Below are positions 1,740 through 54,745 of a stretch of 64,000 bases of DNA, piece after piece. Position numbers and translations under genes: made by a program. The stretch is taken from positions 13,061,579-13,125,578 of the forward strand of contig NC_043026.1 of NCBI RefSeq assembly GCF_006345805.1, read 5' to 3'. Source of the stretch: Octopus sinensis. Taxonomy: Eukaryota. The notes beneath the pieces were generated by a model. The model saw only the letters and a list, made by a program, of their open reading frames with translations, ran no database searches and had not been told where the DNA came from. Each line of letters opens with the position of its first letter. Positions within the stretch are counted from its first letter, which is position 1.

Positions 1740-2160
1740 CGGACACTGGTAGAATGTGTCATATAAAACATCTTTTACTCTTATCATTTTTGAGAAAAGC
1801 TTATATTTAGGAAGTTATTTCATGTTAAAGTTGTCCTATTTCGGCAATTTCAACCAATCAATGACGTGTTTTCAGCTGAATAAAATTACTGCTATTGTTT
1901 GTCAACAACTTTTGGTGGTGTATTTTTTGTTTGTCACTGTTATTTATGACATCATTTCTGTGTTTGTACTGGTTTTAAGGTTGGGGTTTTAGGGTTAGGG
2001 TTTTAGTGTTAGGGGGTTAGGGTTTTAGGGTTAGGGCTGTCATAAATAACTGACAAACAAAGCATACACTGCTGGAAGTTCTTCTTGACAAACAACAGCA
2101 GTAATTTTATTCTGCTGAATAAACGTCATTGATTGGTTGAAATTAGGGTTAGGGTTATCA
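1740..2160. mobile_element. Foldback/MITE-like element with about 105-bp inverted arms around a degenerate (TTAGGG)n loop
   Basis: 1847-1951 (atttcaaccaatcaatgacg...tatttatgaca) is the reverse complement of 2038-2143; the loop holds ttaggg/ttttaggg repeats. Confidence 0.65.
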
Positions 2161-2299: not shown

Positions 2300-4027
2300 T
2301 CATTCCCCTGTGTGGATCCGTTTGTGACTTGTTAAGCCACTCTTAGACACAAACGATGTCCCACAAATTTCACAGTGGAATGGCTTCTCTCCAGTGTGAC
2401 GACGTTTGTGAATTACAAGACCAGAATTTTGAGAAAAAGATTTCCCACAGACTTCACATTGGAAAGGTTTTTCCCCAGTATGGACCCTTCTATGCCTTGT
2501 TAAGTCAGTGCTGTAGGCGAAAGATTTCCCACAGATTTCACAGCCAAATGGTTTCTCCCCTGTATGTTTCCGTTTGTGTTTCGTTAAGGCACTGTTCGAC
2601 AAAAAAGATGTCCCACATACTTCACAGTGGAAAAGCTTTTCTCCCGTGTGGATATGTTTGTGAATTATAAGACCGGAATTCTGAGAAAAAGATTTTCCGC
2701 ATATTTCACATTGGAAAGGTTTCTCCCCCGTGTGCATTCGTTTATGCCTAATTAAGTCACTGCTACAAACGAAGGATTTCCCGCACATTTGACAGTCAAG
2801 TGTCTTCTCCCGTCTGTGTATTCTTTTGTGTTTAATTAAGTTACTATTATAGGCAAACAAAGCCCCACATATTTCACAACGATACGGTTTTTCTCCAGTG
2901 TGGCTTCGTTTATGCATGACAACTTTAGAATAGTTTGAGAAAGATTTGCCACAGATTTGGCAGTGAAATGCTTTCTCTTCTCTGTGTATTGCTTCGTGTT
3001 CTGTTAAGTGACTGTTCGTCACAAAAAATGACCCACATATATTACAACGATATGGTTTCTCTCCTGCGTGACTTCGTTTATGTATGACAAGCGTAGAATT
3101 TTGAGTGAAGCATTTCCCGCAGATTTCACAGAGATGCAGTTTTCGCCCAGAGTGCTTTAATTTGTGTGTGCTTAAGAGGCTGTTACTAACAAAAGACTTT
3201 CCACAAATTCCACAATGGAAAGGTTTATCTCCAGTGTGAGTTCGTCTGTGAACTACAATATAAGAATTATCAGAGAAGGATTTACCACAGATTTCACAAT
3301 GGAAAGGTCTTTCACCTGTGTGACTACGTAAGTGAAGAACAAGATTAGAATTTTTAGTGTAAGATTTGCCACAAACCATGCAGTGGAAAGGTCTTTCTCC
3401 TGTATGGCTGCGCTTGTGAACTGCAAGACTAGAAGTTTGAGTGAAACTTTTTCCACACACCTCGCAATGGTGCGGCTTCTCTCCCGTGTGTGTTCGTTTA
3501 TGTATGTTTAAATCACTATTACAAAGAAAATATTTTCCACAGATCTCACAATGACAGCTGTTTTCTCCAGAGTGGATTCTTTCGTGAATTTTTAGCCTAC
3601 TTTTTGAGACAAATGATTTCGCACATATTTCACACTTGAATGGTTTCTCCCCAGTGTGACTACGAGTGTGTAGAACAAGATCAGAATTGTTAATGAATGA
3701 TTTTCCACAGATCTCACAATGAAACAGTCTTGCTCCAGTGTGTATCCGTTTGTGTTTCGTTAAGACATCTTCAGAGACAAAATATTTCCCACATATTTCA
3801 CAATTATAGGCTTTTTCCTTATTGTGTATTTCTTTGTGTTTAAAGACTTCTTGCTCCGAAGAGAATGTCTTCCTACAAACATCACATTTATATTCGGTGA
3901 TATTTCCCTGTCTCGATCTTTCTTTAGTAAATACTTCACCATTAACAGTTTTCTCATCCCCGTCTGTCTCTCTATCTGTATCTGTATCGTTCAAAACAAT
4001 CGTGTCCAAGTGATCAACGTTCTCCAT
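2300..4027 (-). CDS. C2H2 zinc-finger protein, 575 aa, 19 tandem fingers (ZNF-1)
   Basis: Uninterrupted ORF of CxxC-x12-HxxxH units with TGEKP-type linkers; no KRAB/ZAD/SCAN/BTB domain. Confidence 0.95.
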   Translation of the reverse strand: MENVDHLDTIVLNDTDTDRETDGDEKTVNGEVFTKERSRQGNITEYKCDVCRKTFSSEQEVFKHKEIHNKEKAYNCEICGKYFVSEDVLTKHKRIHTGARLFHCEICGKSFINNSDLVLHTRSHTGEKPFKCEICAKSFVSKSRLKIHERIHSGENSCHCEICGKYFLCNSDLNIHKRTHTGEKPHHCEVCGKSFTQTSSLAVHKRSHTGERPFHCMVCGKSYTKNSNLVLHLRSHTGERPFHCEICGKSFSDNSYIVVHRRTHTGDKPFHCGICGKSFVSNSLLSTHKLKHSGRKLHLCEICGKCFTQNSTLVIHKRSHAGEKPYRCNICGSFFVTNSHLTEHEAIHREEKAFHCQICGKSFSNYSKVVMHKRSHTGEKPYRCEICGALFAYNSNLIKHKRIHRREKTLDCQMCGKSFVCSSDLIRHKRMHTGEKPFQCEICGKSFSQNSGLIIHKHIHTGEKLFHCEVCGTSFLSNSALTKHKRKHTGEKPFGCEICGKSFAYSTDLTRHRRVHTGEKPFQCEVCGKSFSQNSGLVIHKRRHTGEKPFHCEICGTSFVSKSGLTSHKRIHTGE

Positions 4028-9134: not shown

Positions 9135-10886
9135 TGACTTTTTTACCACTGCAGATATAAAATCAGAGGCGGCGACGATAGATTACATCGATATAAAGGA
9201 AGACGATGTAACCAAGGCTATAGATGAAATGAAAACAGACTCAGCTACTGGCCCCGATGGATTCCCGGCAATCCTCCAAAAAGCATGTAAGAGAGTCCTA
9301 GCAAGACCACTGCAGTTCCTCTTTCAGAGCTTCCTTGCAGCTGGCAAACTTCCAGGAAAACTGAAGGAAGGTAAAATATGCCCCATTCATAAAGGAGGTA
9401 GCAGAGTGGAAGCCAAGAACTATAGACCTATCTCTCTGACCTCACACATCAGCAAGGTCATGGAACGAATAGTCAGAAGGAAGCTGATCACCTTCCTTGA
9501 AGAGAATGACTTGCTGCCCGACACCCAACATGGTTTCCAACCAGGGAGAAGCTGTTTAACTCAGCTCCTACAACACTATGACTGGGTGCTGAAACGGCTG
9601 CTCAACCACTCAAATGTGGAAGTGATATATCTCGACTTTGCAAAGGCCTTTGATAAAGTCGATCATGGAATGATATGTCACAAACTGCGTGATCTCAACA
9701 TAGTTGGAAAACTGGGAGAATGGCTTCATGACTTTCTGAAGGATAGAAGTCAGGTGGTAGTAGCCAATGGGGCCACCTCCATTAACACACAAATAGTGAG
9801 CGGTGTTCCGCAGGGCACTGTTCTGGGACCACTACTGTTCATAATGGCCCTCTCAGACATGCCCTCAGCCACGCAGAGAGCCACGATCACAAGTTATGCA
9901 GATGATACAAAGGTTTCACAGGCAATACAGAACCCTGAGGACACTAAACACCTGCAATGTGAGCTGGACGAAATATACAAGTGGGCTGAAAAGAATAGCA
10001 TGCAGTTCAATGCTGGAAAGTTTCAAGCTTTATACTATCAGCATGCAAAACTGAATGCAATACCCAATGAATACACTGGACCCGGAGGGATTGCAATCCC
10101 AGAGGCACAATCAGTGCGTGACCTGGGTATTCACATGAGTGATGACGCGACCTTTCATGTACATGTTGCTAAACTGACAATGAAATGTAGACGGCTGGCT
10201 GGATGGATTCTTAGAACCTTTAGAACAAGAAACCATGATGGTCCTCTGGAAGACACTTGTCCTAAGCCACTTTGACTATTGCTCTCAGCTATGGTCACCA
10301 TCCAGTGTCAAGTTGATCACAGAACTTGAGGCGATCCAACGAAGCTACACAAAGAAGATAGCCTCTATGCAGAATGTAAGCTACTGGGAAAGACTCAAGA
10401 GATTAAAATTATATTCCCTGGAGCGTAGGCGGGAAAGATATGCCATAATATACATCTGGAAGATCCTGGAGGGAAGTGTCCTGAACTTTGGCATCGTGAG
10501 TTACGCAAATGCCAGAACTGGGCGCCACTGCGTGGTGCCTAGGACTCCAAACCTGCCATCAAGATGTAGGACAAGATTCTGTGATAGCCTGGGCTTCCGA
10601 GGCACACAGCTCTTCAATATCCTCCCGAAGAACCTGAGAGACCTGCATGGGGTGGATACAGATGTCTTTAAAATGAAGCTGGATCTCTTCCTGTCAGGTG
10701 TCCCAGATGAACCAACTTCACGGCAGGAGGGGCAGATGAGGGCAGCTGCATCGAACTCTCTTATGCACCAAATAGCAGTTGCTAGAAAGCCTCCATGAAG
10801 TGAAACCAAGTAGCAACACCAAATGGCGGTGCCCCAGCATGGCCACAGCTCATAAGCTGAAACTAGAATCAATCAATCAATCAATC
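9135..10886 (+). mobile_element. 5'-truncated CR1-clade LINE, RT domain with one frameshift near 10235, (ATCA)n tail
   Basis: GPDGFP, KNYRPISLTS, QHGF..GRSCLTQLL, YLDFAKAFDKVDH, SGVPQGTVLGPLLF, YADDT, then the CR1-type C-terminus LKLYSLERRRER; tail aatcaatcaatc at 10867-10886. Confidence 0.9.
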
Positions 10887-13665
<2,779 letters not shown>

Positions 13666-13909
13666 TGTTTGTGTTTGTGTTTGTCTCCCCAACATCGCTT
13701 GACAACCGATGCTTGTGTGTTTACATCCCTGTAACTTAGCAGTTCAGTAAAAAAGGCTGATAGAATAAGTACTAGGCTTACAAAAGAATATCTCCAGGGG
13801 TCGATTTGCTTGACTAAAAGGCGGTGCTCCAGCATGGCCACAGTCAAATGACTGAAACAAGTAAAAGAATAAGAAAGCAATGTATTTTCATTTAAAATTT
13901 CCTGTAGTT

Positions 13910-15574
13910 TTAATTAAAAATAGGTGATAAACGAGGCTTTTGTCCCGTGTGGCTTCGTTTGTGGATAACAAGACTAGAACTCTGAGTAAAAGATTTTCCA
14001 CAGATTTCACAGTGGAATGGTTTTTCCCCCGTATGGATCTGTATGTGAATTTTTAGTACACTTTTACGGACAAATGATTTCATACATATTTCACACTTGA
14101 ATGGTTTCTCCCCCGTATGGCCACGTATGTGTCTTGCAAGGTCATGATTGCTTATAAATGATTTCCGGCATATTTCACAGCTGAACGGTTTCTCATCAGA
14201 GTGGATTCTTTTGTGAGCTGTTAGTACACTTTTAGAAACAAATGATTTTGCACATATTTCACACTTGAATGGCTTTTCCCCAGAATGGCCACGTGTGTGT
14301 CTTGCAAGGTCATAATTGCTTATAAATGATTTCTCACAGATCTCACAATGAAACAGTCTTTCTCCAGAGTGGGTTCTTTTGTGAAATGTTAGCCCACTTT
14401 TACACACAAAGGATTTTGGACATATTTCACACTTGAATGGTTTTTCCTTGGTGTGACAAAGAGAATGTACTGCAAGATGAGAATTGCTTATAAAAGATTT
14501 TCCACATATTTCACAGTGGAAAGGTTTCTCCCCAGAGTGGATTTTTCTGTGAGTTGTAAGTACATTTCTCCAGGCAAATGATTTATCACATATTTCACAC
14601 TTGAATGGTTTCTCCCCAGTGTGACTACGTGTGTGTAGAACAAGATCAGAATTGTAAATAAAAGATTTTCCGCATACTTCACAGCTGAACGGTCTCTCTC
14701 CACTATGGACTTTTTTGTGAGTTGTTAGCCCACTTTTAGAAACAAATGATTTTGGACATATTTCACACTTGAATGGTTTTTCCTCGGTGTGACAAAGAGA
14801 ATGTACCACAAGATGAGAATTCTTAGTAAATGATTTCCGACATATTTCACAGCTGAATGGTTTCTCCCCAGTATGGATTTTCGTGTGAGTTGTAAGTACA
14901 TTTTTCCAGGCAAAAGATTTACCACATATTTCACACTTGAATGGTTTTTCTCCAGTGTGAGTAGGCATGTGTACTGCAAGGTTAGGATTGCTTATAAATG
15001 ATTTACCACAGATTTCACACTTGAATGGTTTCTCCCCAGTGTGACGACGTGTGTGTACTGAAAGTTCAGAATTTCTAAGATATGATTTCCCACAGATCTC
15101 ACAACTGAAGGGTTTCTCATCAGAGTGGATCCTTTTATGTCTGTTTAAGACACTGTTACAGACAAATGATTTTGTACATATTTCACACTTGAATGGTTTT
15201 TCCCCAGTGTGACGACGTGTGTGTATTGCAAGATGAGAATTGCAAAGAAACGATTTTCCACAGATCTCACAATGGAACAGTCTTGCTCCAGTGTGTATCC
15301 GTTTGTGTTTCGTTAAAGACATCTCAGAGACAAAATTCTTTCCCACATATTTCACAATTATAGCTTTTTCCTTATTGTGTATTTCTTTGTGTTTAAAGAC
15401 TTCTTGCTCCGAAGGAATGTCTTCCTACAAACATCACATTTATATTCGGTGATATTTCCCTGTCTCGATCTTTCTTAGTAAATACTTCACCATAACAGTT
15501 TTCTCATCCCCGTCTGTCTCTCTATCTGTATCTGTATCGTTCAAAACATTGTTCCAAGTGATCAACGTTCCCAT
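13910..15574 (-). CDS. C2H2 zinc-finger protein ZNF-2 (about 18 fingers); 5' end frameshifted in this sequence
   Basis: ORF 13910-15355 holds 16 complete fingers plus a partial one. 15300-15600 aligns to the ZNF-1 N-terminus except for several 1-2-nt indels, which places the homologous ATG at 15574. Confidence 0.85.
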
Positions 15575-17151: not shown

Positions 17152-18450
17152 ATGGAGAACGTTGATGATTTGGACACTTCAAGCACAACTGTTTTTAGCA
17201 ATATAGATACAGTTAGTGGAACAGACCGACATCAGAAAGCCGCTGACAAAAACATTCCTGAATATCGCTGTGAGATTTGTAGAAAGACATTCTCTTCAGA
17301 AGATGAAGTCGTCACACACAAAGAAATACACAAGAAGGAAAAACTGTTCCATTGTGATATCTGTGGGAAAGCTTTCACCCGGAATTCTCATGTTGTAGTT
17401 CACAAACGTAGTCACACGGGAGAAAAACCATTCCATTGCGAAATATGTGAGAAGTCTTTTGTTTCTAATAGCGTCCTAGCAACACACAAACGGATCCACA
17501 CGGGAGAGAAACCCTATCATTGTGAAATCTGCGGGAAATCTTTTGTCTCAAATAGTGATTTAACGATCCACAAACGGATCCATAGTGGGGAAAAGCCGTA
17601 TCACTGTGAAATCTGTGGGAAAAGATTTGTTAATAATAGTAATTTAACGACGCACAGAAGTATTCACGTTGGGGAATCGCCCTATTATTGTGAAATATGT
17701 AGGAAATATTTCGTGAAGAGTAGTAATTTAACGAGACATAAACGAATTCACTCTGGAGAAAAACCGTTCCACTGTGACATATGTGAGAAATCTTTCTCTG
17801 ATAAATCTAGTCTTGCGTTCCATGAAAGACAACACTCTGGAGAAAAACCATATCGTTGTGAAATTTGTTCAAAATCGTTCTCTCAGAAATCTAGGCTTGT
17901 AGTTCATGAAAGACTACACACAGGAATAAAACCTTATCATTGTCAAATATGTGAAAAATATTTTGTCTCAAATATTGGTCTCAAAAAACACTTAAGAATA
18001 CACACGGGGGTAAACCCTTTCAGCTGCGAAATATGTGGAAAGTCTTTCACGCAAAATTCTAGTCTTCAAATACACAAGCTTAATCACATAGGAGAAAAAC
18101 CTTTTCATTGTGATATATGTGGGAAGTCTTTCAGTCAAAATTCTAGCCTTCATATCCACAAACGTAGTCACACTGGGGTAAAGCCTTATCGCTGTGACAT
18201 ATGTGGGAAGTCTTTCACGCAAAATTCTAGCCTTCATATCCACAAACGTAGTCACACGGGAGAGAAACCTTACCATTGCGAAATCTGTGGGACATGGTTT
18301 GTGTCTAGCAGTGACTTAACAAGGCACATACGGATCCACACGGGGGAAAAACCTTTTCACTGTGAAGTCTGTGGAAAATCCTTTTCTCAGAGTTCTAGTG
18401 TTGTTATCCACAAACGAAGCCACACGGGACGAAAGACATTATTATCGTAA
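17152..18450 (+). CDS. C2H2 zinc-finger protein ZNF-3, 432 aa, 14 fingers
   Basis: Start set at the MENVDDLD ATG (17152) by homology with paralogues; the listed TTG start at 17080 is upstream read-through. Confidence 0.93.
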   Translation: MENVDDLDTSSTTVFSNIDTVSGTDRHQKAADKNIPEYRCEICRKTFSSEDEVVTHKEIHKKEKLFHCDICGKAFTRNSHVVVHKRSHTGEKPFHCEICEKSFVSNSVLATHKRIHTGEKPYHCEICGKSFVSNSDLTIHKRIHSGEKPYHCEICGKRFVNNSNLTTHRSIHVGESPYYCEICRKYFVKSSNLTRHKRIHSGEKPFHCDICEKSFSDKSSLAFHERQHSGEKPYRCEICSKSFSQKSRLVVHERLHTGIKPYHCQICEKYFVSNIGLKKHLRIHTGVNPFSCEICGKSFTQNSSLQIHKLNHIGEKPFHCDICGKSFSQNSSLHIHKRSHTGVKPYRCDICGKSFTQNSSLHIHKRSHTGEKPYHCEICGTWFVSSSDLTRHIRIHTGEKPFHCEVCGKSFSQSSSVVIHKRSHTGRKTLLS

Positions 18451-20459: not shown

Positions 20460-20998
20460 AATATATAAAAAAACACTTTCTTGAAATGTATCCGGTACTT
20501 TCGGTACCTATACCGAAGTTACGCCGAAAATAGGGCTAGAGAGAAAATGCCTGAATGTGAAAATGTTTGAAGATCGATGGAAGAATGTAGCACGGATGTT
20601 GCGTGTGGATGGAACCTCATGAATGCGACACAGGATGTAACTCGGGTATCAGTGGCGAGGCGGGACTCGTGGGGTCCGAATTAACCCTCCATCCGTAATC
20701 TCTTCTAGTCTGTCTTATCGTTCGATTTCATTATATTTTCGTATTTGTGTGAAATTTTTAATGTCATCTTTTTGTATAATCATTCGTTCATCTGACCCCA
20801 AAATCAGATTGTATTGGCCCCTTGTGGGTAATAAAAAAAAAATCTGGCTTTAGATCATTAATTGGTTGTTCCCTATTTTACAGGACAGGGGAAATGACCT
20901 AATCAACAGTGACTTAATCAAGGAACTTTCCTCATCCGTCTTCACTTTTCAAATTCGCAGACATTTGTCAGCTTTTTAAGAATTGCTCAGAAATTAAT

Positions 20999-23113
20999 AT
21001 GGAGAACGTTAATCATTTGGACATTTTTACCACAACTGTTTTTAACAATATGGATAAAGTTAGAATGAAGGTCGGAGGTGAGAAAGATGAAGACAAAAAT
21101 GTTCCTGAATATCACAGCGAGATTTGTCGGAAGGCATTCCCTCTCGAACGCAAAGACTTCACACACAAAGAAGTACATAGTAAGGAAAACTTGTTTCATT
21201 GTGAAATATGTGAGAAACCCTTTCTTAGAAACACCAGTCTTGTGGATCACGAATGTAGTCACGTCGGTGAAAAGTGTTTTGACTGTGAAATTTGTGAGAA
21301 ACCCTTTCTTAGAAACACCAGTCTTGTGGATCATGAATGTAGTCACGTCGGTGAAAAACGTTTTGACTGTGAAATTTGTGAGAAACCCTTTCTTAGAAAC
21401 ACCAGTCTTGTGGATCACGAACGTAGTCACGTCGGTGAAAAACGTTTTGACTGTGAAATTTGTGAGAAACCCTTTCTTAGAAACACCAGTCTTGTGGATC
21501 ACGAACGTAGTCACGTCGGTGAAAAACGTTTTGACTGTGAAATTTGTGAGAAACCCTTTCTTAGAAACACCAGTCTTGTGGATCACGAATGTAGTCACGT
21601 CGGTGAAAAGTGTTTTGACTGTGAAATTTGTGAGAAACCCTTTCTTAGAAACACCAGTCTTGTGGATCACGAACGTAGTCACGTCGGTGAAAAACGTTTT
21701 GACTGTGAAATTTGTGAGAAACCCTTTCTTAGAAACACCAGTCTTGTGGATCACGAATGTAGTCACGTCGGTGAAAAACGTTTTGACTGTGCAATTTGTG
21801 AGAAACCCTTTCTTAGAAACACCAGTCTTGTGGATCACGAATGTAGTCACGTCGGTGAAAAACGTTTTGACTGTGCAATTTGTGAGAAACCCTTTCTTAG
21901 AAACACCAGTCTTGTGGATCACGAATGTAGTCACGTCGGTGAAAAGCGTTTTGACTGTGCAATTTGTGAGAAACCCTTTCTTAGAAACACCAGTCTTGTG
22001 GATCACGAATGTAGTCACGTCGGTGAAAAACGTTTTGACTGTGAAATTTGTGAGAAATCTTGTGCTCGGGATGCTTATCTTGTTCACAGCCGTTGTCACA
22101 CCGGAAGAAAATCATCCCAGTGCGAAAAGTGTGACAAATCTTTTGACCCAAACAGAGATTTAACAACAACGCACGTGAAAATATGCAATGAAGAAAAGCT
22201 ATTCCAATGTGAAATATGCGAAAAAATTTTTGGCTCTAGTAGCATCCTGGCAACGCACATACGAATACACACTGGTGAAAAACCGTTCCATTGTGAAATC
22301 TGTGGGAAATGTTTTGCTTATAAGCAACAACTTACGACACACAGTAGTCTACACACTGGGGAAAAACCTGAATGTGAAATATGTGGCAAATCTTTCTCTC
22401 GAAATGCTTATCTTATTGTTCATAAACGAAGCCACACCGGAGAAAGACCATTCCGATGTGAAATGTGTGAGAAATCTTTTGTTTCCAGTAGTTTGTTAAC
22501 AACACACAAAAGGGTACACACTGGGGAAAAGCCATTCCGATGTGAAGTATGTGAGAAATTTTTTGGTTCTTGTAGCGTCCTATCAAGACATAGAAAAGTA
22601 CACAGTGGGGAAAAACCGTTTAGATGTGAAATCTGTGGGAAAGGTTTTGCCTATAATTGTGACTTAAACAGACACGTAAGAGTCCATACAGGAGAGAGAC
22701 CATTCCATTGTGAAACTTGTGGTAAATCTTTCTCTGACAATTCTAGTCTTGCAAGCCACAGAAGTATGCACACCGGGATAAAACAGAATAACTGTGAGAC
22801 ATGTGGTAAATCTTTTCTTCATAAATCTCATCTTACAGTTCACAGACGCAGTCATACGGGAGAAAAGCCATTCCGGTGTGAGACATGTGGGAATTCTTTT
22901 GCTTCCGGTTACGTCCTGACGCAACACAAACGGACCCATACGGGAGAAAGACCATTCCATTGTGAGACATGTGGCAAATCATTCACTCAGAATTCTCATC
23001 TAATTGAGCACAAACGTCGACACACGGGAGAAAAACCATTCCAATGTGAAGTATGTGAGAAATATTTTGTGTCTTCTAGTAAATTAAAGAATCACAAAAG
23101 GATTCATTCTTGA
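20999..23113 (+). CDS. C2H2 zinc-finger protein ZNF-4, 704 aa: 10 near-identical fingers, 2 degenerate fingers, 11 diverse fingers
   Basis: Single ORF with MENVNHLD leader and finger consensus throughout. Confidence 0.93.
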   Translation: MENVNHLDIFTTTVFNNMDKVRMKVGGEKDEDKNVPEYHSEICRKAFPLERKDFTHKEVHSKENLFHCEICEKPFLRNTSLVDHECSHVGEKCFDCEICEKPFLRNTSLVDHECSHVGEKRFDCEICEKPFLRNTSLVDHERSHVGEKRFDCEICEKPFLRNTSLVDHERSHVGEKRFDCEICEKPFLRNTSLVDHECSHVGEKCFDCEICEKPFLRNTSLVDHERSHVGEKRFDCEICEKPFLRNTSLVDHECSHVGEKRFDCAICEKPFLRNTSLVDHECSHVGEKRFDCAICEKPFLRNTSLVDHECSHVGEKRFDCAICEKPFLRNTSLVDHECSHVGEKRFDCEICEKSCARDAYLVHSRCHTGRKSSQCEKCDKSFDPNRDLTTTHVKICNEEKLFQCEICEKIFGSSSILATHIRIHTGEKPFHCEICGKCFAYKQQLTTHSSLHTGEKPECEICGKSFSRNAYLIVHKRSHTGERPFRCEMCEKSFVSSSLLTTHKRVHTGEKPFRCEVCEKFFGSCSVLSRHRKVHSGEKPFRCEICGKGFAYNCDLNRHVRVHTGERPFHCETCGKSFSDNSSLASHRSMHTGIKQNNCETCGKSFLHKSHLTVHRRSHTGEKPFRCETCGNSFASGYVLTQHKRTHTGERPFHCETCGKSFTQNSHLIEHKRRHTGEKPFQCEVCEKYFVSSSKLKNHKRIHS
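21200..22057 (+). repeat. Coding 84-bp tandem repeat x10 (CEICEKPFLRNTSLVDHE[C/R]SHVGEK[R/C]FD)
   Basis: Exact 84-nt period with only a few variable sites per unit. Confidence 0.97.
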
Positions 23114-28971: not shown

Positions 28972-29922
28972 ATGGAGAACGTTGATCAGTTGGACATTTC
29001 AAACACAACTGTTTTTAAGAACGGAGATGCAGTTGAAGAGACAGAGAGAGATGAGGAAGCTGAAGACAAAAGTGTTGGTGAATTTCGCTGTGAGATTTGT
29101 AGGAAGAAATTCTCTTCAGAAGATGAAGTCTTCTCGCATGAAGAAATACACAAGAAGAAGAAACGGTTCCGTTGTGAAATCTGTGGGAAATCATTTAGTG
29201 CTAAAGCTTATCTTTTGATTCACAAACGTAGTCATACAGGAGAAAAACCAATCCATGGGAAATGTTTTGTTTCCAACGGAGATTTAAAAAGACACAAAAG
29301 GATGCACTCGGGCGCAAAACCTTACAGCTGTGAAGTATGTGGGAAAATTTTCAGTCAAAATTCTAATCTTGTTGTTCATAAACGGAGTCACACAGGAGAA
29401 AAACCATTCGAGTGTGAAATTTGTGGGAAATCTTTTGTTTCCAACGGAGATTTAAAAAGACACAGAAAAATCCACACGGGGGAAAAACCGTTCCACTGTG
29501 AAGTATGTGGGAAAACTTTCAGTCAAAATTCAAATCTTGTTGTTCATAAACGGAGTCACACAGGAGAAAAACCATTCGAGTGTGAAATATGTGATAAATC
29601 TTTTGTTTCTAGTACTGTCCTAACAACACACAGGCGAATACATACGGGTGAGAAACCTTATCATTGTGGGATGTGTATGAAATCGTTCACCGATCATTCC
29701 AGTCTTGTATTCCACGAACGACAACACACGGGGGAGAAGCCTTATCCTTGTGAGATATGTGGGACCCTGTTTATGTGTAGCAGTGACTTAACAAAACACA
29801 TAAGAGTTCACACGGGAGAAAAGCTTTTCCACTGTGGAATATGCGGAAAATCTTTTACTCATAATTCTAGCCTGGTTAGCCACAAACGAAGTCACATCAC
29901 AGGTCGGAAAAGCTTGTTGTGA
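28972..29922 (+). CDS. C2H2 zinc-finger protein ZNF-5, 316 aa, 9 complete fingers plus one half finger
   Basis: MENVDQLD leader; the third unit lacks CxxC (EKPIHGKCF, in-frame deletion); the two-finger unit SNGDLKRH/QNSNLVVH is duplicated. Confidence 0.92.
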   Translation: MENVDQLDISNTTVFKNGDAVEETERDEEAEDKSVGEFRCEICRKKFSSEDEVFSHEEIHKKKKRFRCEICGKSFSAKAYLLIHKRSHTGEKPIHGKCFVSNGDLKRHKRMHSGAKPYSCEVCGKIFSQNSNLVVHKRSHTGEKPFECEICGKSFVSNGDLKRHRKIHTGEKPFHCEVCGKTFSQNSNLVVHKRSHTGEKPFECEICDKSFVSSTVLTTHRRIHTGEKPYHCGMCMKSFTDHSSLVFHERQHTGEKPYPCEICGTLFMCSSDLTKHIRVHTGEKLFHCGICGKSFTHNSSLVSHKRSHITGRKSLL

Positions 29923-30017: not shown

Positions 30018-30585
30018 GGCGAGCTGGCAGAGTGGTTAGCACGCCGGGCAAAATGCTTAGCGGTATTTCGTCTGCCGTTACGTTCTGAGTTCAAGTTCCG
30101 CCGAGGGCGACTTTACCTGTCATCCTTTCGGGGTCGATAAATTAAGTACCAGTTATGCACTGGTGTCGATGTAATCAATTTAATCCGTTTGTCCCCTCTG
30201 TGTTTATCTCCTTGTGGGTAGTAAAGAAATAGGTATTTCGTCTGTCTTTATGTTCTGAGTTCAAATTCCGCCGAGGGCGACTTTACCTTTCATCCTTTCG
30301 GGGTCGATAAATTAAGTACCAGTTATGCACTGGTGTCGATGTAATCAATTTAATCCGTTTGTCCCCTCTGGTTTATCTCCTTGTGGGTAGTAAGAAATAG
30401 GTATTTCGTCTGTCTTTATGTTCTGAGTTCAAATTCCGCCGAGGGCGACTTTACCTTTCATCCTTTCGGGGTCGATAAATTAAGTACCAGTTATGCACTG
30501 ATTTCGATATAATCGACTTAATCCGTCTGTCTGTCCTTGTTTGTCCTCTCTGTGTTTAGCCCTTTGTGGGTAATAAAGAAATAGG
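30018..30585 (+). mobile_element. Meta-domain-like SINE (family D) with 3 head-to-tail body repeats
   Basis: Head ggcgagctggcagagtggttagc; repeated unit with gagttcaaattcc (B-box-like) and cctttcatcctttcggggtcgataaattaagtaccag, resembling the MetaSINE/Sauria-SINE core. Confidence 0.65.
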
Positions 30586-32734: not shown

Positions 32735-33250
32735 GTCTGCCGTTACGTTCTGAGTTCGACTTTGCCTTTCATCCTTTCGGGATCGATGAATTAAGTATCA
32801 GTTACGCACTGGAGTCGATGTAATCGACTTAATCCCTTTGTCTGTCCTTGTTTGTCGCCTCTGTATTTAGCCCCTTGTTGGTAGTAAAGAAATAGGTATT
32901 TTGTCTGCCGTTACGTTCTGAGTTCAAATTCCGGCGAGGTCGACTTTGCCTTTCATCCTTTCGGAGTTGATTAAATAAGTACCAGTTATGCACTGGGGTC
33001 GATATAATCGACTTAATCCCTTTGTCTGTCCTTGTTTGTCCCGTCTGTGTTTAGCCCATTGTTGGTAGTAAAGAAATAGGTATTTCGTCTGCTGTTACGT
33101 TCTGAGTTCAAATTCCGCCGAGGTCGACTTTGCCTTTCATCCTTTCCGGGTCGATTAAATAAGTATCAGTTACGCACTAGGGTCGATGTAATCGACTTAA
33201 TCCCTTTGTTTGTCCCCTCTATGTTTAGCCCCCTGTGGGCAATAAAAAAG
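32735..33250 (+). mobile_element. Family D SINE body array, 3 units
   Basis: About 185-bp period, same unit as 30018 and 53777. Confidence 0.65.
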
Positions 33251-33459: not shown

Positions 33460-34219
33460 GGATCTTTTCGGTTTGAACGGCAGTTTTTAACAATTTCTAG
33501 ATAACTAAAAAAAATTTAAACTTCGTATACCGGTAGAATGTGTTAAAACATCTTTTTCTCTTGGCTTTATTGAGAAAATTCTATAATTTGTAAGATATTT
33601 GTTGTTTTTTTTCTTCAATTTCTGCAATTTCAACCAATCAATTACGTCCATTGAGGTAAAAAAAATCATTCTGTGCCGTATGAATATGCCCCTCGTTTAA
33701 GAAACAGATTGGATTTATTTACATATCTGAAGACAAAAAGATACCCTTCCCCCACCCCTAACTCTAACCCTAACCCTAAAACAGATTGAAATGCAATAGA
33801 TAGATACTAGGGTCATAATTATGGGTGACAATTATATGACACCGCTAGAAAACTGCCGTTCAAACCAAAAAGATCCAAACGAGTGTTTGGGAGAGTGAAG
33901 TATTTATTAAGTGTTATCAGAAATATGCCCCTCGTTTAAGAAACAGATTGGATTTATTTACATATCTGAAGACAAAAAGATACCCTTCCCCCCCACCCTA
34001 ACTCTAACCCTAACCCTAAAACAGATTGAAATGCAATAGATAGATACTAGGGTCATAATTATGGGTGACAATTCATATGACACCGCTAGAAAACCCCTAA
34101 CTCTAACCCTAAACCCTAAAACAGATTGAAATGCAATAGATAGATACTAGGGTCATAATTATGGGTGACAATTTCATATGACACCGCTAGAAAAACTGCC
34201 GTTCAAACCAAAAAGATCC
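33460..34219. mobile_element. GGATCTTTT-TIR MITE with 8-bp TSD (aaacgatg); internal duplication
   Basis: TIR ggatcttttcggtttgaacggcagtttt; TSD at 33452-33459 and 34220-34227; paralogous empty site aaggaaacgatgttgggagag at about 40815-40836. Confidence 0.8.
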
Positions 34220-35186: not shown

Positions 35187-35645
35187 ATGCCACGAACACC
35201 AGATGCGAAGGAGCTGTCAGATTTTCAAAGAGGACGTATTGTGGGTCAGTCTGATAGTGGACGTAGCCAGCGTAAGATCGCGCAAAACCTTGGAATTCCT
35301 CTTGCCACAGTCAACAGAGTGATTGTCCAGTTCACCAGCGAAGGAAAGGAGTCAACCGCCTCCCGCTCAGGTCGACCTGGGCCCTCTGATAAGTGTCTTC
35401 AGACTGTTAAACAGATTGTTGAAAGTAACCCCCATTGCAAGGCAGCTGATGTTGCAGAACAACTTCAAAAGAGTCGGAGTACCTCTGTGAGGTATCTTCA
35501 TCAACTTGGTTACTACGGTAAAGTAGCCAGAAGGAAACCTTCTTTGACCCACAGATATCCAAAGGATTGGACCAATAAAATGGCAGAGAGAGCCAAATGG
35601 GTTAAAACATTAAAACCTGCAGAAGAAATGTCAACTACATCCTAA
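35187..35645 (+). CDS. Tc1/mariner transposase-derived N-terminal HTH protein, 152 aa, no DDE domain (copy 1)
   Basis: [20 protein letters not shown]...[19 protein letters not shown]...RSGRP and [15 protein letters not shown] are typical Tc1 DNA-binding-region motifs; preceded by the acceptor-like ttttttccatttcag. Confidence 0.7.
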
Positions 35646-43522: not shown

Positions 43523-43981
43523 ATGCCACGAACACCAGATGCGAAAGAGCTGTCAGATTTTCAAAGAGGACGTATTGTGGGTCAGTCTGATAGTGGACGT
43601 AGCCAGCGTAAGATTGCACAAAACCTTGGAATTCCTCTTGCCACAGTCAACAGAGTGATTGTCCAGTTCACCAGCGAAGGAAAGGAGTCAACCGCCTCCC
43701 GCTCAGGTCGACCTGGGCCCTCTGATAAGTGTCTTCAGACTGTTAAAAAAATTGTTGAAAGTAACCCCCATTGCAAGGCAGCTGATGTTGCAGAACAACT
43801 TCAAAAGAGTCGGAGAACTTCTGTGAGGTATCTTCATCAACTTGGTTACTACGGTAAAGTAGCCAGAAGGAAACCTTCTTTGACCCACAGATATCCAAAG
43901 GATTGGACAAATAAAATGGTAGAGAAAGCCAAATGGGTTAAAACATTAAAACCTGCAGAAGAAATGTCAACTACATCCTAA
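43523..43981 (+). CDS. Tc1-derived HTH protein, 152 aa (copy 2)
   Basis: Same length as copy 1, with 4 aa differences; same upstream acceptor tttttcatttcag. Confidence 0.7.
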
Positions 43982-44685: not shown

Positions 44686-45635
44686 ATCGACCCCAGTGTT
44701 TCACTGGTACTTAATTCATCGACCCCCACCGAAAGGATGAAAGGCAAAGTCGACCTCGGCGGAATTTGAACAAACAAGAACAGACAAACGGATTAAGTCG
44801 ATTATATGGACCCCAGTGCGTAACTGGTACTTATTTAATCGATCCCGAAAGGATGAAAGGCAAAGTCGACCTCGGCGGAATTTGAACTCAGAACGTAGCT
44901 GCAGACGAAATACCTATTTCTTTACTACCCACAAGGGGCCAAACACAGAGGAGACAAACAAAAACAGACAAACGGATTAAGTCGATTATATGGACGCCAG
45001 TGCGTAACTGGTACTTATTTAATCGATCCCGAAAGGATGAAAGGCAAAGTCGACCTCGGCGGAATTTGAACTCAGAACGTAGCTGCAGACGAAATACCTA
45101 TTTCTTTACTACCCACAAGGGGCTAAACACAGAGGGGACAAACAAGAACAGACAAACGGATTAAGTCGATTATATGGACCCCAGTGCGTAACTGGTACTT
45201 ATTTAATCGATCCCGAAAGGATGAAAGGCAAAGTCGACCTCGGCGGAATTTGAACTCAGAACGTAACTGCAGACGAAATACCTATTTCTTTACTACCCAC
45301 AAGGGGCCAAACACAGAGGAGACAAACAAGAACAGACAAACGGATTAAGTCGATTATATGGACCCCAGTGCGTAACTGGTACTTATTTAATCGATCCCGA
45401 AAGGATGAAAGGCAAAGTCGACCTCGGCGGAATTTGAACTCAGAACGTAGCTGCAGACGAAATACCTATTTCTTTACTACCCACAAGGGGCCAAACACAG
45501 AGGAGACAAACAAAAACAGACGAAGGGATTAAATCGATTATATCGACCCCAGTGCGTAACTGGTATTTATTTAATCGACCCCGAAAGGATGAAAGGCAAA
45601 GTCGACCCTGGTGGAATTTGAACTCAGAACGTAGC
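44686..45635 (-). mobile_element. Family D SINE body array, about 6 units
   Basis: gaaaggatgaaaggcaaagtcgacc occurs 6 times, mostly at about 183-bp spacing. Confidence 0.7.
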
Positions 45636-48049: not shown

Positions 48050-48883
48050 TTAATTCCTCGGTTCAAACTTTAGTCTTTTGAGCAATGTTGACATAATCTG
48101 AGGCATTTGTTTACAGCTATCGTATTCCAGATTATCCAACTTTCTTAATTCCAAAGAGCCAACACGTTTACAGACAGCAGTTAACAGTTTCATGATTTCA
48201 TATTCAGTGCCATATTTCACCAAAACTTTACTTAAAGTTTGCATAAACCACGAACCCTTACGTTTATGAATGACTGACGGATATTTATCAGACGACGAAT
48301 GGAAAACCAACATATCTGCCATGATTGGAATTTTCGGTGGCTTTCTTTCAGATTCTTCTTCCTCGGCATCTTTTCTTTCGACTCCATCATCAATCTTGCT
48401 TCCACGACATGCTTCAATAAATATTAATTTAGGTATTCCTGTCAGAGATGGACAGCGATCGGGTCTCAGGCAAGAAAGCAATTCGTCCAGCTCAACTTCA
48501 CCCTCGTATCCACGTATAATATCGTTTCCTTTACCGTGGCTCAGAATCGCACAAATAAAGCAATCAATATTAATTTTAGGATCGATTTGGCCCAAATCTT
48601 CTAAAGTCCCGAGCATTTCTTTGGCTGTAAAATCTGTAAATACATTGATATCATCTTCATGAAATCCAAGATTTTCTAAAGCCTTTTTAAAATGTTTTGT
48701 GTCTTTCGATGAGCCGTGACGAGTTTCAAGTCTTGGGTCACTGAAATTTTTCACGTTGAAAATGTAGGCAACACCTCGCTTTTCATGTGTCATGTCATAT
48801 TTTTCGAAACATTTCATTAAATCTTCCTCGGTTGGTAAATCGAACTGGGCGCATGTACTACCATTTACATTTACAGTATCCAT
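48050..48883 (-). CDS. Intronless caspase-3/7-like peptidase C14 A, 277 aa (EACRG)
   Basis: KRGVAYIFN, R.GSSKD, CFICAILSHG (catalytic His), PKLIFIEACRG (catalytic Cys, 48401-48415), IPIMADML, GSWFMQ, KQMP; short prodomain. Confidence 0.93.
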   Translation of the reverse strand: MDTVNVNGSTCAQFDLPTEEDLMKCFEKYDMTHEKRGVAYIFNVKNFSDPRLETRHGSSKDTKHFKKALENLGFHEDDINVFTDFTAKEMLGTLEDLGQIDPKINIDCFICAILSHGKGNDIIRGYEGEVELDELLSCLRPDRCPSLTGIPKLIFIEACRGSKIDDGVERKDAEEEESERKPPKIPIMADMLVFHSSSDKYPSVIHKRKGSWFMQTLSKVLVKYGTEYEIMKLLTAVCKRVGSLELRKLDNLEYDSCKQMPQIMSTLLKRLKFEPRN

Positions 48884-50514: not shown

Positions 50515-51775
50515 ATTTACGCAAGATTTAGGAATTTAATTGTTTTATCAACAAATTTAGGAATTTAATTATTTAATCAATAAATTTATTAAATTTAGGA
50601 ATTTAATTATTTTATCAACAAATTTAGGAATTTAATTATTTAATCAATAAATTTATTAAATTTATGAATTTAATTATTTTATCGCTAGATTTAGGAATTT
50701 AATTATTTAATCAATAAATTTATTAAATTTAGGAATTTAATTATTTTATCGCTAGCTTTAGCAATTTAATTATTTTATCAACAAATTTATGAATTTAATT
50801 ATTTAATCAATAAATTTATTAAATTTATGAATTTAATTATCTTATCGCTAGATTTAGGAATTTTATTATTTTATCAACAAATTTAGGAATTTAATTATTT
50901 AATCAATAAATTTATTAAATTTATGAATTTAATTTTTTTATCACTAGATTTAGGAATTTAATTATTTAATCAATAAATTTATTAAATTTAGGAATTTAAT
51001 TATTTTATCGCTAGCTTTAGGAATTTAATTATTTTATCAACAAATTTATGAATTTAATTATTTAATCAATAAATTTATTAAATTTAGGAATTTAATTATT
51101 TTATCGCTAGATTTAGGAATTTAATTATTTTATCAACAAATTTAGGAATTTAATTATTTAATCAATAAATTTATTAAATTTAGGAATTTAATTATTTTAT
51201 CGCTAGATTTAGGAATTTAATTATTTTATCAACAAATTTATGAATTTAATTATTTAATCAATAAATTTATTAAATTTAGGAATTTAATTATTTTATCGCT
51301 AGATTTAGGAATTTAATTATTATATCAACAAATTTAGGAATTTAATTATTTAATCAATAAATTTATTAAATTTAGGAATTTAATTATTTTATCGCTAGAT
51401 TTAGGAATTTAATTATTTTATCAACAAATTTAGGAATTTAATTATTTAATCAATAAATTTATTAAATTTAGGAATTTAATTATTTTATCGCTAGATTTAG
51501 GAATTTAATTATTTTATCAACAAATTTATGAATTTAATTATTTAATCAATAAATTTATTAAATTTATGAATTTAATTATCTTATCGCTAGATTTAGGAAT
51601 TTTATTATTTTATCAACAAATTTAGGAATTTAATCAATAAATTTATTAAATTTATGAATTTAATTATTTTATCGCTAGATTTAGGAATTTAATTATTTAA
51701 TCAATAAATTTATTAAATTTAGGAATTTAATTATTTTATCGCTAGATTTAGGAATTTAATTATTTTATCAACAAA
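50515..51775. repeat. AT-rich minisatellite with higher-order structure (29/38/29-bp monomers)
   Basis: Monomers tta(g/t)gaatttaattatt + ttatcaacaaat / taatcaataaatttattaaat / ttatcgctagat, mostly in A-B-C order. Confidence 0.9.
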
Positions 51776-53776: not shown

Positions 53777-54745
53777 GGCGAGCTGGCAGAATCGTTAGCA
53801 CGCCGGGCGAGATGCTTAGTGGTATTTCGTCTGCCGTTACGTTCTGAGTTCAAATTCCGCCGAGGTCGACTTTGCCTTTCATCCTTTCGGGGTCGATTAA
53901 ATAAGTACCAGTTACACACTGGGGTCCATATAATCAACTTAATCCGTTTGTCTGTCCTTGTTTGTCCCCTCTGTGTTTAGCCCCTTGTGGGTTGTAAAGA
54001 AGTAGGTATTTCGTCTGTCACTACGTTCTGAGTTCAAATTCCGTCGAGGTCGACTTTGCCTTTCATCCTTTCGGGGTCATTAAATAAGTACCAGTTACAC
54101 ACTGGGGTCCATATAATCAACTTAATCCGTTTGTCTGTCCTTGTTTCTCCTCTCTGTGTTTAGCCCCTTGTGGGTTGTAAAGAAATAGGTATTTCGTCTG
54201 CAGCTACGTTCTGAGTTCAAATTCCGCCGAGGTCGACTTTGCCTTTCATCCTTTCGGGGTCGATTAAATAAGTACCAGTTACACACTGGGGTCCATATAA
54301 TCGACTTAATCCGTAATCCGTTTGTCTGTCCTGTTTGTCCCCTCTATGTTTAGCCCTTGTGGGTAATAAAGAAATAGGTATTTCGTCTGCCGTTACGTTC
54401 TGAGTTCAAATTCCGCCGAGGTCGACTTTGCCTTTCATCCTTTCGGGGTCGATTAAATAAGTACCAGTTACACACTGGGGTCCATATAATCGACTTAATC
54501 CGTTTGTCTGTCCTTGTTTGTCCCCTCTATGTTTAGCCCCTTGTGGGTAATAAAGAAATAGGTATTTCGTCTGCCGTTACGTTCTGAGTTCAAATTCCGC
54601 CGAGGTCGACTTTGCCTTTCATCCTTTCGGGGTCGATTAAATAAGTACCAGTTACACACTGGGGTCCATATAATCGACTTAATCTGTTTGTCTGTCCTTG
54701 TTTGTCCCCTCTGTGTTTAGCCCCTTGTGGGTAGTAAAGAAATAT
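53777..54745 (+). mobile_element. Family D SINE: one head plus 5 tandem bodies
   Basis: ggcgagctggcagaatcgttagc head, then about 185-bp units; inserted into the caspase-B upstream region and absent at the paralogous 49265 site. Confidence 0.75.

What the first reader, a model, noticed from the sequence alone, without database searches (positions are those of the whole stretch)
21200..22057. PRDM9-like homogenised zinc-finger minisatellite, but with an invariant recognition helix
Ten consecutive 84-bp fingers are nearly identical, whereas the other ~70 fingers in the cluster are diverse. Helix positions -1/2/3/6 are always R/T/S/D. The only amino-acid variation is R/C (CGT/TGT, CpG-type transitions) at two non-contact sites and E/A in CxxC, the opposite of PRDM9, where variation concentrates at contact residues. 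Ten identical fingers imply a repeated 3-bp target of about 30 bp. R at -1 with an acidic residue at 6 resembles engineered CNG-binding modules, so a (CNG)n triplet repeat or satellite is a speculative target. The non-canonical VGEKRF linker may instead indicate RNA or protein binding. A very recent expansion is also possible.
Basis: partly seen in the sequence, partly recalled or inferred. Interest (0 to 1): 0.72.

Follow-up and report, generated by a model that had tools for sequence, protein, structure and literature searches.

The report
Young ten-copy zinc-finger repeat in octopus
One 84-bp zinc-finger unit inside an unannotated, octopus-specific zinc-finger gene has been copied ten times in a row fairly recently; the fingers are identical because the copies are young, not because anything shows their DNA-reading residues are protected, so this is an extreme case of an ordinary process.

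Summary
Window 21200-22057 holds 10.2 head-to-tail 84-bp units (97% matches, no indels). They lie in frame in an intact 704-aa ORF (20999-23113, +) of Octopus sinensis. All ten fingers read RNTSLVD with a VGEKRF linker, and the 69 other fingers in the window are diverse.

Only 6 of 84 columns vary (3 synonymous, 3 not). The chance that none falls in the four contact codons is 0.38-0.62, so the "invariant helix" shows no selection. Units differ by 1.4-2.6%, close to the O. sinensis-O. vulgaris divergence (1.6%, about 2.5 My).

The amplified unit corresponds to finger 2 of an Octopus-only paralogue family. It was already atypical before it was amplified, at three framework positions (P before the core F, and linker T to V and P to R). 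Three broken fingers flank it. It still passes Pfam and is predicted to fold as a normal finger.

There is no PR/SET or KRAB domain, so it is not PRDM9. A (CNG)n target is a fair but untested guess. The orthologous array and any expression data could not be obtained.

Best reading: a young unequal-exchange amplification, probably near-neutral, lying N-terminal to 11 canonical fingers.

The parts
20840..20998 (+). Upstream region conserved among the four paralogues, with an acceptor-like TTTGTCAG; probably the start of the large coding exon or 5'UTR
   Evidence: Alignment A4 of the regions upstream of ZNF1/3/4/5 has 74% mean column identity. The splice-site role is inferred.
20999..23113 (+). 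Intact ORF of 704 aa ('ZNF4'), a member of an Octopus-only C2H2 subfamily; not present as a called protein in the public collection
   Evidence: ORF listing. Pfam finds only C2H2 families. Exact look-ups were negative. No close relative was found in 5.8 billion proteins.
20999..21199 (+). Subfamily N-terminus MENVNHLD..., including a degenerate first finger (21116-21178, SEICRKAFPLERKDFTHKEVH; first Cys replaced by Ser)
   Evidence: Alignments A1 and A2 with ZNF1/3/5. The profile finds O. bimaculoides and O. sinensis proteins. No Pfam family is detected.
21200..22039 (+). Ten complete 84-bp units, each one C2H2 finger with helix RNTSLVD and linker VGEK(R/C)F; six variable columns
   Evidence: The unit aligns to finger 2 of the paralogues. 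Pfam zf-C2H2 scores 32.9 bits for two units. AlphaFold2 predicts four beta-beta-alpha fingers, pLDDT 86.9.
22040..22057 (+). Right edge of the array: 18 bases (CEICEK) identical to the unit consensus, at the start of the next finger
   Evidence: Unit 11 and the pairwise alignment. Read as the in-register homology used for unequal exchange (inference).
22040..22207 (+). Two degenerate fingers: CEICEKSCARDAYLVHSRCH (22040-22099; C-H spacing 11, core F replaced by C) and CEKCDKSFDPNRDLTTTHVKIC (22121-22186; spacing 13, last His replaced by Cys)
   Evidence: Translation. Not matched by the finger pattern. Pfam is sub-threshold at 17.5 bits.
22208..23107 (+). Eleven diverse canonical fingers, mostly with TGEKP/TGERP linkers; the likely sequence-specific DNA-binding part
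   Evidence: Pfam's best stretches fall here. A canonical pair scores 53.5 and 53.4 bits.

Best explanation
The array is a young intragenic amplification of one zinc-finger unit.

ZNF4 is one of five tandem paralogues of an Octopus-specific C2H2 gene family. Its second finger was duplicated repeatedly, in register. The likely mechanism is unequal crossing-over or replication slippage between the conserved CEICEK and linker sequences of neighbouring 84-bp fingers (inferred). Occasional gene conversion between units also seems to have occurred.

The ten fingers are alike because their common ancestor is recent, roughly as old as the O. sinensis-O. vulgaris split (order 2-4 My). No selection holding the recognition helix constant has been shown.

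The finger was already atypical before it was amplified: Pro before the core Phe, and linker VGEKR instead of TGEKP. It sits in an N-terminal half of the gene whose other three fingers are broken. After amplification, CpG decay spread R-to-C changes through most units.

At the protein level the block adds ten foldable but sub-canonical fingers in front of eleven canonical ones. The canonical tail most likely does the sequence-specific DNA reading. The block is most likely near-neutral baggage giving at most weak, repetitive DNA contact (inferred, not shown).
For: Shown:
- Array anatomy and intact frame.
- Only 6 of 84 columns vary, 3 synonymous and 3 not. This does not differ from neutrality (P=0.08). 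The absence of contact-codon variation is expected by chance (P=0.38-0.62).
- Mean unit divergence is 2.57%, or 1.40% without the three CpG columns. The substitution divergence between the window and the syntenic O. vulgaris locus L004 is 1.62% over 19.5 kb. The species split is dated at 2.5 Mya (PMC10700109).
- Variant sharing points to stepwise growth: units 3, 4 and 6 are identical, units 8 and 10 are identical, and units 1 and 5 differ at one position. There is one four-gamete violation (columns 5 x 75, unit 9).
- The unit aligns to finger 2 of the paralogues, yet is at most 67% identical in DNA to any other finger.
- Its framework residues are outliers: P at x7 0/69, linker V 1/69, linker R 1/69.
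- 7 of 10 units carry Cys where 50 of 69 other fingers have Arg.
- The flanking fingers are broken.
- Two array units score 32.9 bits on zf-C2H2 and 34 bits on the linker-spanning zf-H2C2_2 model (cut-off 40). Canonical neighbours score 45-53 and 53.
- Other young finger duplications lie in the same cluster. The ZNF5 fingers at 29329 and 29497 differ by 2 of 84 bases, and ZNF2 has an older 168/336-bp higher-order repeat.
Against: - A run of ten is the longest among the 253 poly-ZNF proteins compared. The only other long runs (9 and 4) are in PRDM9-type proteins, so this is an extreme case.
- The synonymous:non-synonymous ratio (3:3 against a neutral expectation near 1:5) leans weakly towards purifying selection (P=0.08).
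- The fingers keep all zinc ligands and core residues, pass Pfam, and are predicted to fold. The model superimposes on DNA-bound arrays, so a function is not excluded.
- The ORF is intact over 704 codons.
- Neither expression nor the orthologous array could be examined.
Confidence: 0.6

Rival explanations
1. Functional homopolymeric reader. The ten identical fingers are kept by selection and together read a 3-bp-periodic DNA target of about 30 bp, such as a (CTG/CCG)n-like triplet repeat or a satellite. ZNF4 would then be a repeat-binding factor.
For: - The helix RNTSLVD shares R(-1), N(+1), L(+4) and an acidic +6 with engineered CNG modules: RNDALTE=CTG (PMC3607563) and RNDTLTE=CCG (PMC7317221).
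- The fingers are predicted to fold, and the model superimposes on DNA-bound Aart, PRDM9 and CTCF arrays (TM 0.80-0.86).
- There is a weak excess of synonymous change.
- Octopus ZNFs have been proposed to target repeats (PMC10547256; PMC12513265).
Against: - The helix lacks Asp at +2, which is present in every cited engineered CNG module. It has Asp rather than Glu at +6.
- The linker has lost T(+1) and P(+5) of TGEKP, a motif described as highly predictive of DNA binding (PMC11327367).
- The conserved Arg at +9 is replaced by Cys in 7 of 10 units.
- Helix invariance is what chance predicts.
- The window contains no (CNG)5 tract. This is uninformative for the rest of the genome.
Confidence: 0.12
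2. Old array kept homogeneous. The array is much older than it looks and is continually homogenised by gene conversion and unequal exchange, as the PRDM9 minisatellite is, but without diversifying selection on contact residues.
For: - One four-gamete violation among unit variants.
- Variant types are interspersed along the array rather than strictly blocked.
- PRDM9-type arrays show that such homogenisation exists (PMC5519329; P0198 and P0157). One complete whale PRDM9 has no amino-acid diversity between fingers.
Against: - No other finger array in the cluster is homogenised (32-41% divergence).
- A single incompatibility can be a recurrent A-to-G change.
- Divergence equal to the between-species yardstick is explained most simply by age.
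Confidence: 0.12
3. Non-DNA role. Because the linker is not TGEKP, the block serves as a protein- or RNA-binding scaffold rather than a DNA reader.
For: - Non-canonical linker, scoring below the cut-off on the linker-spanning Pfam model.
- Literature statement that TGEKP predicts DNA binding rather than RNA or protein binding (PMC11327367).
Against: - No positive evidence. G(+2) and K(+4) of the linker are retained.
- Weak Pfam hits to zf-met and jaz models occur equally in the canonical neighbours.
- The fold matches are all DNA-bound arrays.
Confidence: 0.08
4. Assembly artefact. The copy number in the assembly is wrong, either inflated or collapsed.
For: Tandem repeats are error-prone in assemblies. 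The gene is absent from the protein annotations searched.
Against: - No indels in 858 bp, and the frame is kept.
- The six variants are shared between units in a structured pattern rather than scattered singletons.
- 858 bp is far shorter than long reads. That the O. sinensis assembly of Li et al. 2020 is PacBio-based is from memory, not checked here.
Confidence: 0.07

Closest known systems
PRDM9 zinc-finger coding minisatellite (vertebrates)
   Same: Head-to-tail 84-bp finger units with very high identity between units, turned over by unequal exchange and gene conversion (PMC5519329). The predicted fold superimposes on PRDM9 finger structures 5eh2 and 5v3g (TM 0.80-0.84).
   Different: No KRAB, SSXRD or PR/SET domain. 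Amino-acid diversity lies entirely outside the contact residues (P=0). The PRDM9-type proteins seen here vary at -1, +3 and +6. The linker is VGEKR, not TGEKP. The lineage is a mollusc.
Ordinary intragenic finger duplications in poly-ZNF genes
   Same: In-register duplication of whole fingers that gives adjacent fingers with identical helices. Seen here in P0070, P0176 and P0262 (three identical fingers each) and in the same window in ZNF5 (168-bp two-finger duplicate; two fingers 2/84 apart) and ZNF2.
   Different: Ten copies instead of two or three. This is the longest run among 253 poly-ZNF proteins compared, apart from a PRDM9-type protein.
Octopus lineage-specific C2H2 expansions
   Same: A tandem cluster of single-large-exon paralogues. 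The shared N-terminus (MENVxxLD...EYxCxxCRKxFSSExEV) was found only in O. bimaculoides and O. sinensis proteins. This fits the octopus-specific expansion clusters described in PMC12513265.
   Different: This gene and its four neighbours are not among the called proteins. None of the relatives retrieved carries an internal homogenised block.
Engineered CNG-recognising finger modules (RNDALTE=CTG, RNDTLTE=CCG, RSDKLTE=CGG)
   Same: R at -1, N at +1, L at +4 and an acidic residue at +6.
   Different: T instead of D at +2, D instead of E at +6, V at +5, a different scaffold and linker. No binding data exist for the octopus helix.

Membership tests
PRDM9 | PR/SET methyltransferase domain N-terminal to the finger array | tested here: not met
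   Pfam on the whole 704-aa protein finds only zinc-finger families plus a sub-threshold BolA hit. The 67-aa N-terminus matches no family.
PRDM9 | KRAB-related and SSXRD domains | tested here: not met
   No such Pfam hit. Upstream coding exons cannot be excluded, but the four paralogues share the same ATG context.
PRDM9 | Tandem C2H2 array with very high identity between fingers | tested here: met
   Ten units, 97% matches. Mean pairwise difference 2.6%.
PRDM9 | Amino-acid diversity concentrated at DNA-contact residues (statistic P of Baker et al. 2017) | tested here: not met
   P = 0.0 for the array, against 0.23-0.28 for neighbouring genes and 0.14 if uniform. Only three positions vary, so the test has little power.
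PRDM9 | Germline expression and hotspot specification | not testable with these tools
   No expression or recombination data are available here.
C2H2 zinc finger (Pfam PF00096) | C-x2-C-x12-H-x3-H with core Phe and Leu | tested here: met
   All ten units.
C2H2 zinc finger (Pfam PF00096) | Score at or above the Pfam gathering cut-off | tested here: met
   Two units score 32.9 bits against a cut-off of 25.2. Canonical neighbours score 44.7-53.5.
C2H2 zinc finger (Pfam PF00096) | Beta-beta-alpha fold | tested here: met
   AlphaFold2 prediction of four units: pLDDT 86.9, a hairpin plus helix in each unit. Foldseek matches to DNA-bound fingers. This is a prediction, not an experiment.
DNA-binding poly-ZNF class (TGEKP-linked) | Conserved TGEKP-type linker between fingers | tested here: not met
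   The linker is VGEK(R/C). V and R are each seen in 1/69 other fingers. zf-H2C2_2 scores 34.0 against a cut-off of 40. G(+2) and K(+4) are retained.
Octopus 'MENV...SEDEV' C2H2 subfamily | Shared N-terminus and first-finger motif | tested here: met
   48-55% identity to ZNF1/3/5 over 67 aa. The profile retrieves only Octopus proteins over its full length. The first finger of ZNF4 has lost its first Cys.
Coding minisatellite / VNTR | Head-to-tail units of 10-100 bp in a coding region | tested here: met
Coding minisatellite / VNTR | Copy-number polymorphism between individuals | not testable with these tools
   Only one assembly is available.

The most novel reading that the evidence does not exclude
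The ten-finger block is a selected, working module. It would be a natural homopolymeric zinc-finger reader that recognises a 3-bp-periodic satellite or triplet repeat in the octopus genome, or a length-polymorphic coding minisatellite whose copy number tunes binding. Either would be a non-PRDM9, invertebrate example of a functional homogenised finger array.
Probability: 0.1. Interest if true: 0.65.

Novelty: new member of a known kind. Interest (0 to 1): 0.3.

Why it matters
This is a snapshot of how zinc-finger arrays grow: one finger copied ten times within roughly the age of a species pair, inside the large lineage-specific C2H2 expansion of octopuses.

It also serves as a caution. Identical recognition helices in a young array say nothing about selection. 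The PRDM9 signature needs both homogenisation and an excess of contact-residue diversity.

If the block turned out to be expressed and to bind a periodic repeat, it would be a rare natural homopolymeric finger reader, and a handle on the proposed link between octopus ZNFs and repeats. As it stands it is a curiosity of modest interest.

The whole five-gene ZNF cluster is absent from the called proteins. That is a practical point for anyone counting cephalopod C2H2 genes from annotations.

Tried and rejected
- Full-length protein search. It was swamped by generic vertebrate poly-ZNFs (best 40% identity) and gave neither a self hit nor an orthologue.
- Search with the N-terminus, three units and the degenerate region. 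Best hit 33% identity, so no protein in the collection carries this unit.
- Exact look-ups of ZNF4 and of ZNF1/3/5: not on record.
- Attempts to reach the orthologous array:
  - P0155 is not on record.
  - P0160 (O. bimaculoides, L001) lies 3.8 Mb from the caspase locus L002, and its finger exon is only 65-69% identical to the window's ZNF genes.
  - L003 (O. vulgaris) is a paralogous caspase site at 82-87% identity.
  - L004 is the true syntenic O. vulgaris region. It ends at window position 35626, about 12 kb short of ZNF4, with no called gene beyond it to walk from.
- Metagenome scan for the unit: 0 hits.
- Search for a (CNG)5 tract in the window: none.
- The antisense ORF (20987-22099) and the +2-frame ORF (21078-22163) through the array. 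They arise because the unit has no stops in those frames. Their only Pfam hits are summed weak partial matches with no single passing stretch. Rejected as coding.
- Rfam and tRNA scans of the window: nothing.
- Reading the array as a transposon or non-coding satellite: rejected, because it is in frame, homologous to finger 2 of the paralogues, and keeps every zinc ligand.
Full report
**What is there**

Tandem Repeats Finder reports an array at exactly the stated coordinates, 21200-22057: period 84, 10.2 copies, 97% matches, no indels, score 1625. The array lies in frame inside an intact ORF, 20999-23113 on the + strand, 704 aa. Each unit encodes CEICEKPFLRNTSLVDHE[C/R]SHVGEK[R/C]FD, a C-x2-C-x12-H-x3-H finger with the core Phe and Leu. 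Positions -1/+2/+3/+6 are R/T/S/D in all ten units.

Six of the 84 columns vary:
- Column 5, A/C (E/A; units 8-10).
- Column 9, T/A (synonymous).
- Column 51, C/T (synonymous, CpG).
- Column 55, T/C (C/R at +9, CpG; 7 Cys and 3 Arg).
- Column 75, A/G (synonymous).
- Column 76, C/T (R/C at linker +5, CpG; 8 Arg and 2 Cys).

The window holds 79 C2H2 fingers in five genes: ZNF1 (-) 2300-4027, ZNF2 (-) 13910-15355, ZNF3 (+) 17152-18450, ZNF4 (+) 20999-23113 and ZNF5 (+) 28972-29922. The 69 fingers outside the array differ from each other by 32-41% in DNA, against 2.6% within the array. It omitted the three synonymous variable sites.

**Organism and context**

A neighbouring intronless caspase gene (48050-48883, -) has a 100% self hit on a 15,106,159-bp contig. 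Its 90% cluster holds XP_036370982.1 of Octopus sinensis on that same contig, together with an O. vulgaris orthologue. The window is therefore O. sinensis.

All four complete ZNF genes start with MENV(D/N)xLD and carry a conserved first finger (...EYxCEICRKxFSSEDEV...). About 160 bp upstream of the ATG is also conserved, including an acceptor-like TTTGTCAG. So whole gene units were duplicated in tandem.

A profile of this N-terminus, searched against 1.84 billion representative proteins, matched over its full length only a handful of proteins. Those that carry a name are from O. bimaculoides or O. sinensis. This fits the octopus-specific C2H2 expansion clusters described by Holzinger et al. 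2025 (PMC12513265).

Neither ZNF4 nor ZNF1/3/5 is on record as a called protein. No protein among 5.8 billion clusters shares the array unit; the best hit is 33% identical. A product containing the 11-finger tail would have ranked and did not. The gene therefore appears to be unannotated in both the O. sinensis and the O. vulgaris gene sets. This is an inference with the stated caveats.

**Anatomy of ZNF4**

In order along the protein:
- An N-terminal 67 aa whose first finger has lost its first Cys (SEICRK..., 21116-21178).
- The ten units (21200-22039).
- An 18-base stretch identical to the unit, which begins the next finger (22040-22057).
- Two broken fingers: C-H spacing 11 with core Phe replaced by Cys (22040-22099), then spacing 13 with the last His replaced by Cys (22121-22186).
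- Eleven diverse canonical fingers, mostly with TGEKP or TGERP linkers (22208-23107).

Pfam finds nothing in the N-terminus and only sub-threshold signal in the two broken fingers. In the paralogue alignment the unit occupies the place of finger 2 (RNSHVVV in ZNF3, AKAYLLI in ZNF5). Yet it is at most 67% identical in DNA to any other finger in the window, with a median of 57%.

The unit is also an outlier at framework positions that the other 69 fingers conserve:
- Pro before the core Phe: 0/69 (Ser in 48).
- Val at linker +1: 1/69 (Thr in 47).
- Arg at linker +5: 1/69 (Pro in 53).
- Asp at +6: 0/69.
- Thr at +2: 2/69 (Ser in 51).

The finger had therefore drifted well away from the family norm before it was amplified.

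**Is the invariant helix meaningful?**

No. With only six variable columns, the probability that none falls in the 12 bases of the four contact codons is 0.38. It is 0.17 for the whole helix, -1 to +6. With three variable codons out of 28, the probability that none is a contact codon is 0.62.

The ratio of three synonymous to three non-synonymous columns leans towards purifying selection but is not significant (P=0.08). It is also confounded by CpG hypermutability: three of the six variable columns are CpG positions (P=0.02).

The statistic used to recognise PRDM9-type evolution is the share of within-array amino-acid diversity at contact residues (Baker et al. 2017, PMC5519329). It is 0 here and 0.23-0.28 for the neighbouring genes. 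So 'the opposite of PRDM9' is a true description, but it rests on three variable residues.

Among the 69 diverse fingers, entropy peaks at -1, +3 and +6, the usual pattern.

**Age**

The syntenic O. vulgaris locus, L004 (OX597841.1:6276765-6302156, reversed), aligns to window 63996-35626 at 97.15% identity with 1.62% mismatches over 19.5 kb. The two species split about 2.5 Mya (PMC10700109).

Units differ on average by 2.57%, or 1.40% without the three CpG columns. If the units evolve independently, their mean coalescence is about as old as that split, very roughly 2-4 My. This estimate rests on few sites.

Growth was stepwise. Units 3, 4 and 6 are identical, units 8 and 10 are identical, units 1 and 5 differ at one position, and units 8-10 share the E-to-A change. 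One pair of sites shows all four combinations (columns 5 x 75, through unit 9). That points to conversion between units or to a recurrent change.

From the direction of CpG decay and from the paralogue consensus (Arg in 50/69), Arg at +9 is ancestral. The derived Cys now sits in 7 of 10 units, so a framework-damaging change was carried along by later duplications.

**Can the fingers work?**

Two units pass Pfam zf-C2H2 (32.9 bits, cut-off 25.2). That is 12-21 bits below canonical neighbouring pairs. They fall below the cut-off of the linker-spanning zf-H2C2_2 model (34.0 against 40; neighbours score 53).

AlphaFold2 was run on four units, using 48 four-finger stretches from the window as the alignment. 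It predicts four beta-beta-alpha fingers with mean pLDDT 86.9. The model superimposes on DNA-bound arrays: Aart at TM 0.86, PRDM9 at 0.80-0.84, CTCF at 0.84. The fold is therefore probably intact.

The TGEKP linker is described as highly predictive of DNA binding. Thr(+1), Lys/Arg(+4) and Pro(+5) are conserved, Gly(+2) caps the helix, and Lys(+4) touches the backbone (PMC11327367). The array's linker keeps Gly and Lys but has lost Thr and Pro.

**The proposed (CNG)n target**

Engineered modules for CTG (RNDALTE; PMC3607563), CCG (RNDTLTE) and CGG (RSDKLTE; PMC7317221) all have Arg at -1, Asp at +2 and Glu at +6. RNTSLVD shares Arg(-1), Asn(+1), Leu(+4) and an acidic +6, but has Thr at +2 and Asp at +6.

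From general knowledge of finger-DNA contacts (not tested here), Asp(+2) buttresses Arg(-1), and 5'-C recognition by an acidic +6 is weak. The prediction is therefore reasonable but soft. The window holds no (CNG)5 tract, which says nothing about the rest of the genome.

**How unusual is it?**

- The run of 9 (P0198) has a PR/SET-type N-terminus, and the run of 4 (P0157) an SSX/KRAB-like one. Both N-terminal assignments are by eye and were not checked against Pfam. Both arrays vary at -1, +3 and +6, the true PRDM9 signature.
- The runs of three in ordinary ZNFs have identical helices.
- In the same window, ZNF5 carries a two-finger (168-bp) duplicate whose fingers differ by 2 of 84 bases, and ZNF2 carries an older 168/336-bp higher-order repeat.

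The ZNF4 array is thus an oversized instance of ordinary finger duplication, not a PRDM9-type system.

**Verdict**

The feature is real. It is best explained as a young, in-register amplification of an already aberrant finger 2, in the decaying N-terminal half of an unannotated Octopus-specific ZNF paralogue. Helix invariance reflects youth.

PRDM9 membership fails on domain content and on the diversity signature. A functional repeat-reading role, long-term concerted evolution, a non-DNA role and an assembly error remain possible at low probability each.

The decisive data could not be reached with these tools: the O. vulgaris and O. bimaculoides orthologous arrays, raw reads, transcripts and binding assays.

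Noticed in passing
window 2300-4027 (-), 13910-15355 (-), 17152-18450 (+), 20999-23113 (+), 28972-29922 (+): None of the four complete ZNF ORFs of this five-gene cluster (ZNF2 is N-terminally truncated and was not looked up) is on record as a called protein, although the neighbouring caspases are. [quoted passage not shown]
   Followed up: partly
window 29256-29609 (ZNF5): A young two-finger (168-bp) duplication, 91% over 2.1 copies. The fingers at 29329 and 29497 (both QNSNLVV) differ by only 2 of 84 bases. This is a second recent intragenic finger duplication in the same cluster.
   Followed up: partly
window 13987-15356 (ZNF2) and 10887-13666: ZNF2 has an older 168/336-bp higher-order finger repeat (76-79%) and lacks the family N-terminus; its ORF starts inside a finger. 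A 2.8-kb (AT)n microsatellite lies just beyond its 3' end.
   Followed up: no
window 48050-48883, 52513-53337, 60148-60972 (all -); L004 10001-15392: Three tandem intronless caspase (Peptidase_C14) genes. The exact ORF of the middle one is not on record. The 392-aa O. vulgaris model P0152 spans the positions of both the middle and the first caspase, so it looks like a fused gene model.
   Followed up: partly
window 30062-30531, 32752-33215, 44770-45635, 53821-54750: A repeat of about 184 bp (168 bp by TRF at the first site), looking like a SINE, occurs as short tandem arrays (2.5-5 copies, 91-97% identical) at four places. Rfam and ARAGORN find no tRNA or known RNA in them.
   Followed up: partly
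window 9229-10798 (+); 35187-35645 and 43523-43981 (+): A reverse-transcriptase (RVT_1) fragment of a LINE-like element, and two nearly identical 152-aa ORFs with Tc1/mariner-type HTH domains.
   Followed up: partly
window 1971-2036, 33996-34194, 62467-62506: Short interstitial telomere-like (TTAGGG/CCCTAA)n tracts.
   Followed up: no
window 50516-51769: A 1.25-kb AT-rich satellite (period 67/96 bp, GC about 21%) between two of the caspase genes.
   Followed up: no
window 21200-22039: Three of the six variable columns in the array are CpG transitions (enrichment P=0.02). This hints that the gene body is methylated in the germline.
   Followed up: partly
L001 10001-21333 (O. bimaculoides CM046628.1): P0160 (XP_052833736.1) shows that in at least one family member the MENV... 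methionine is internal, preceded by about 106 aa from upstream exons. The ATG at 20999 may therefore not be the true start of ZNF4.
   Followed up: no
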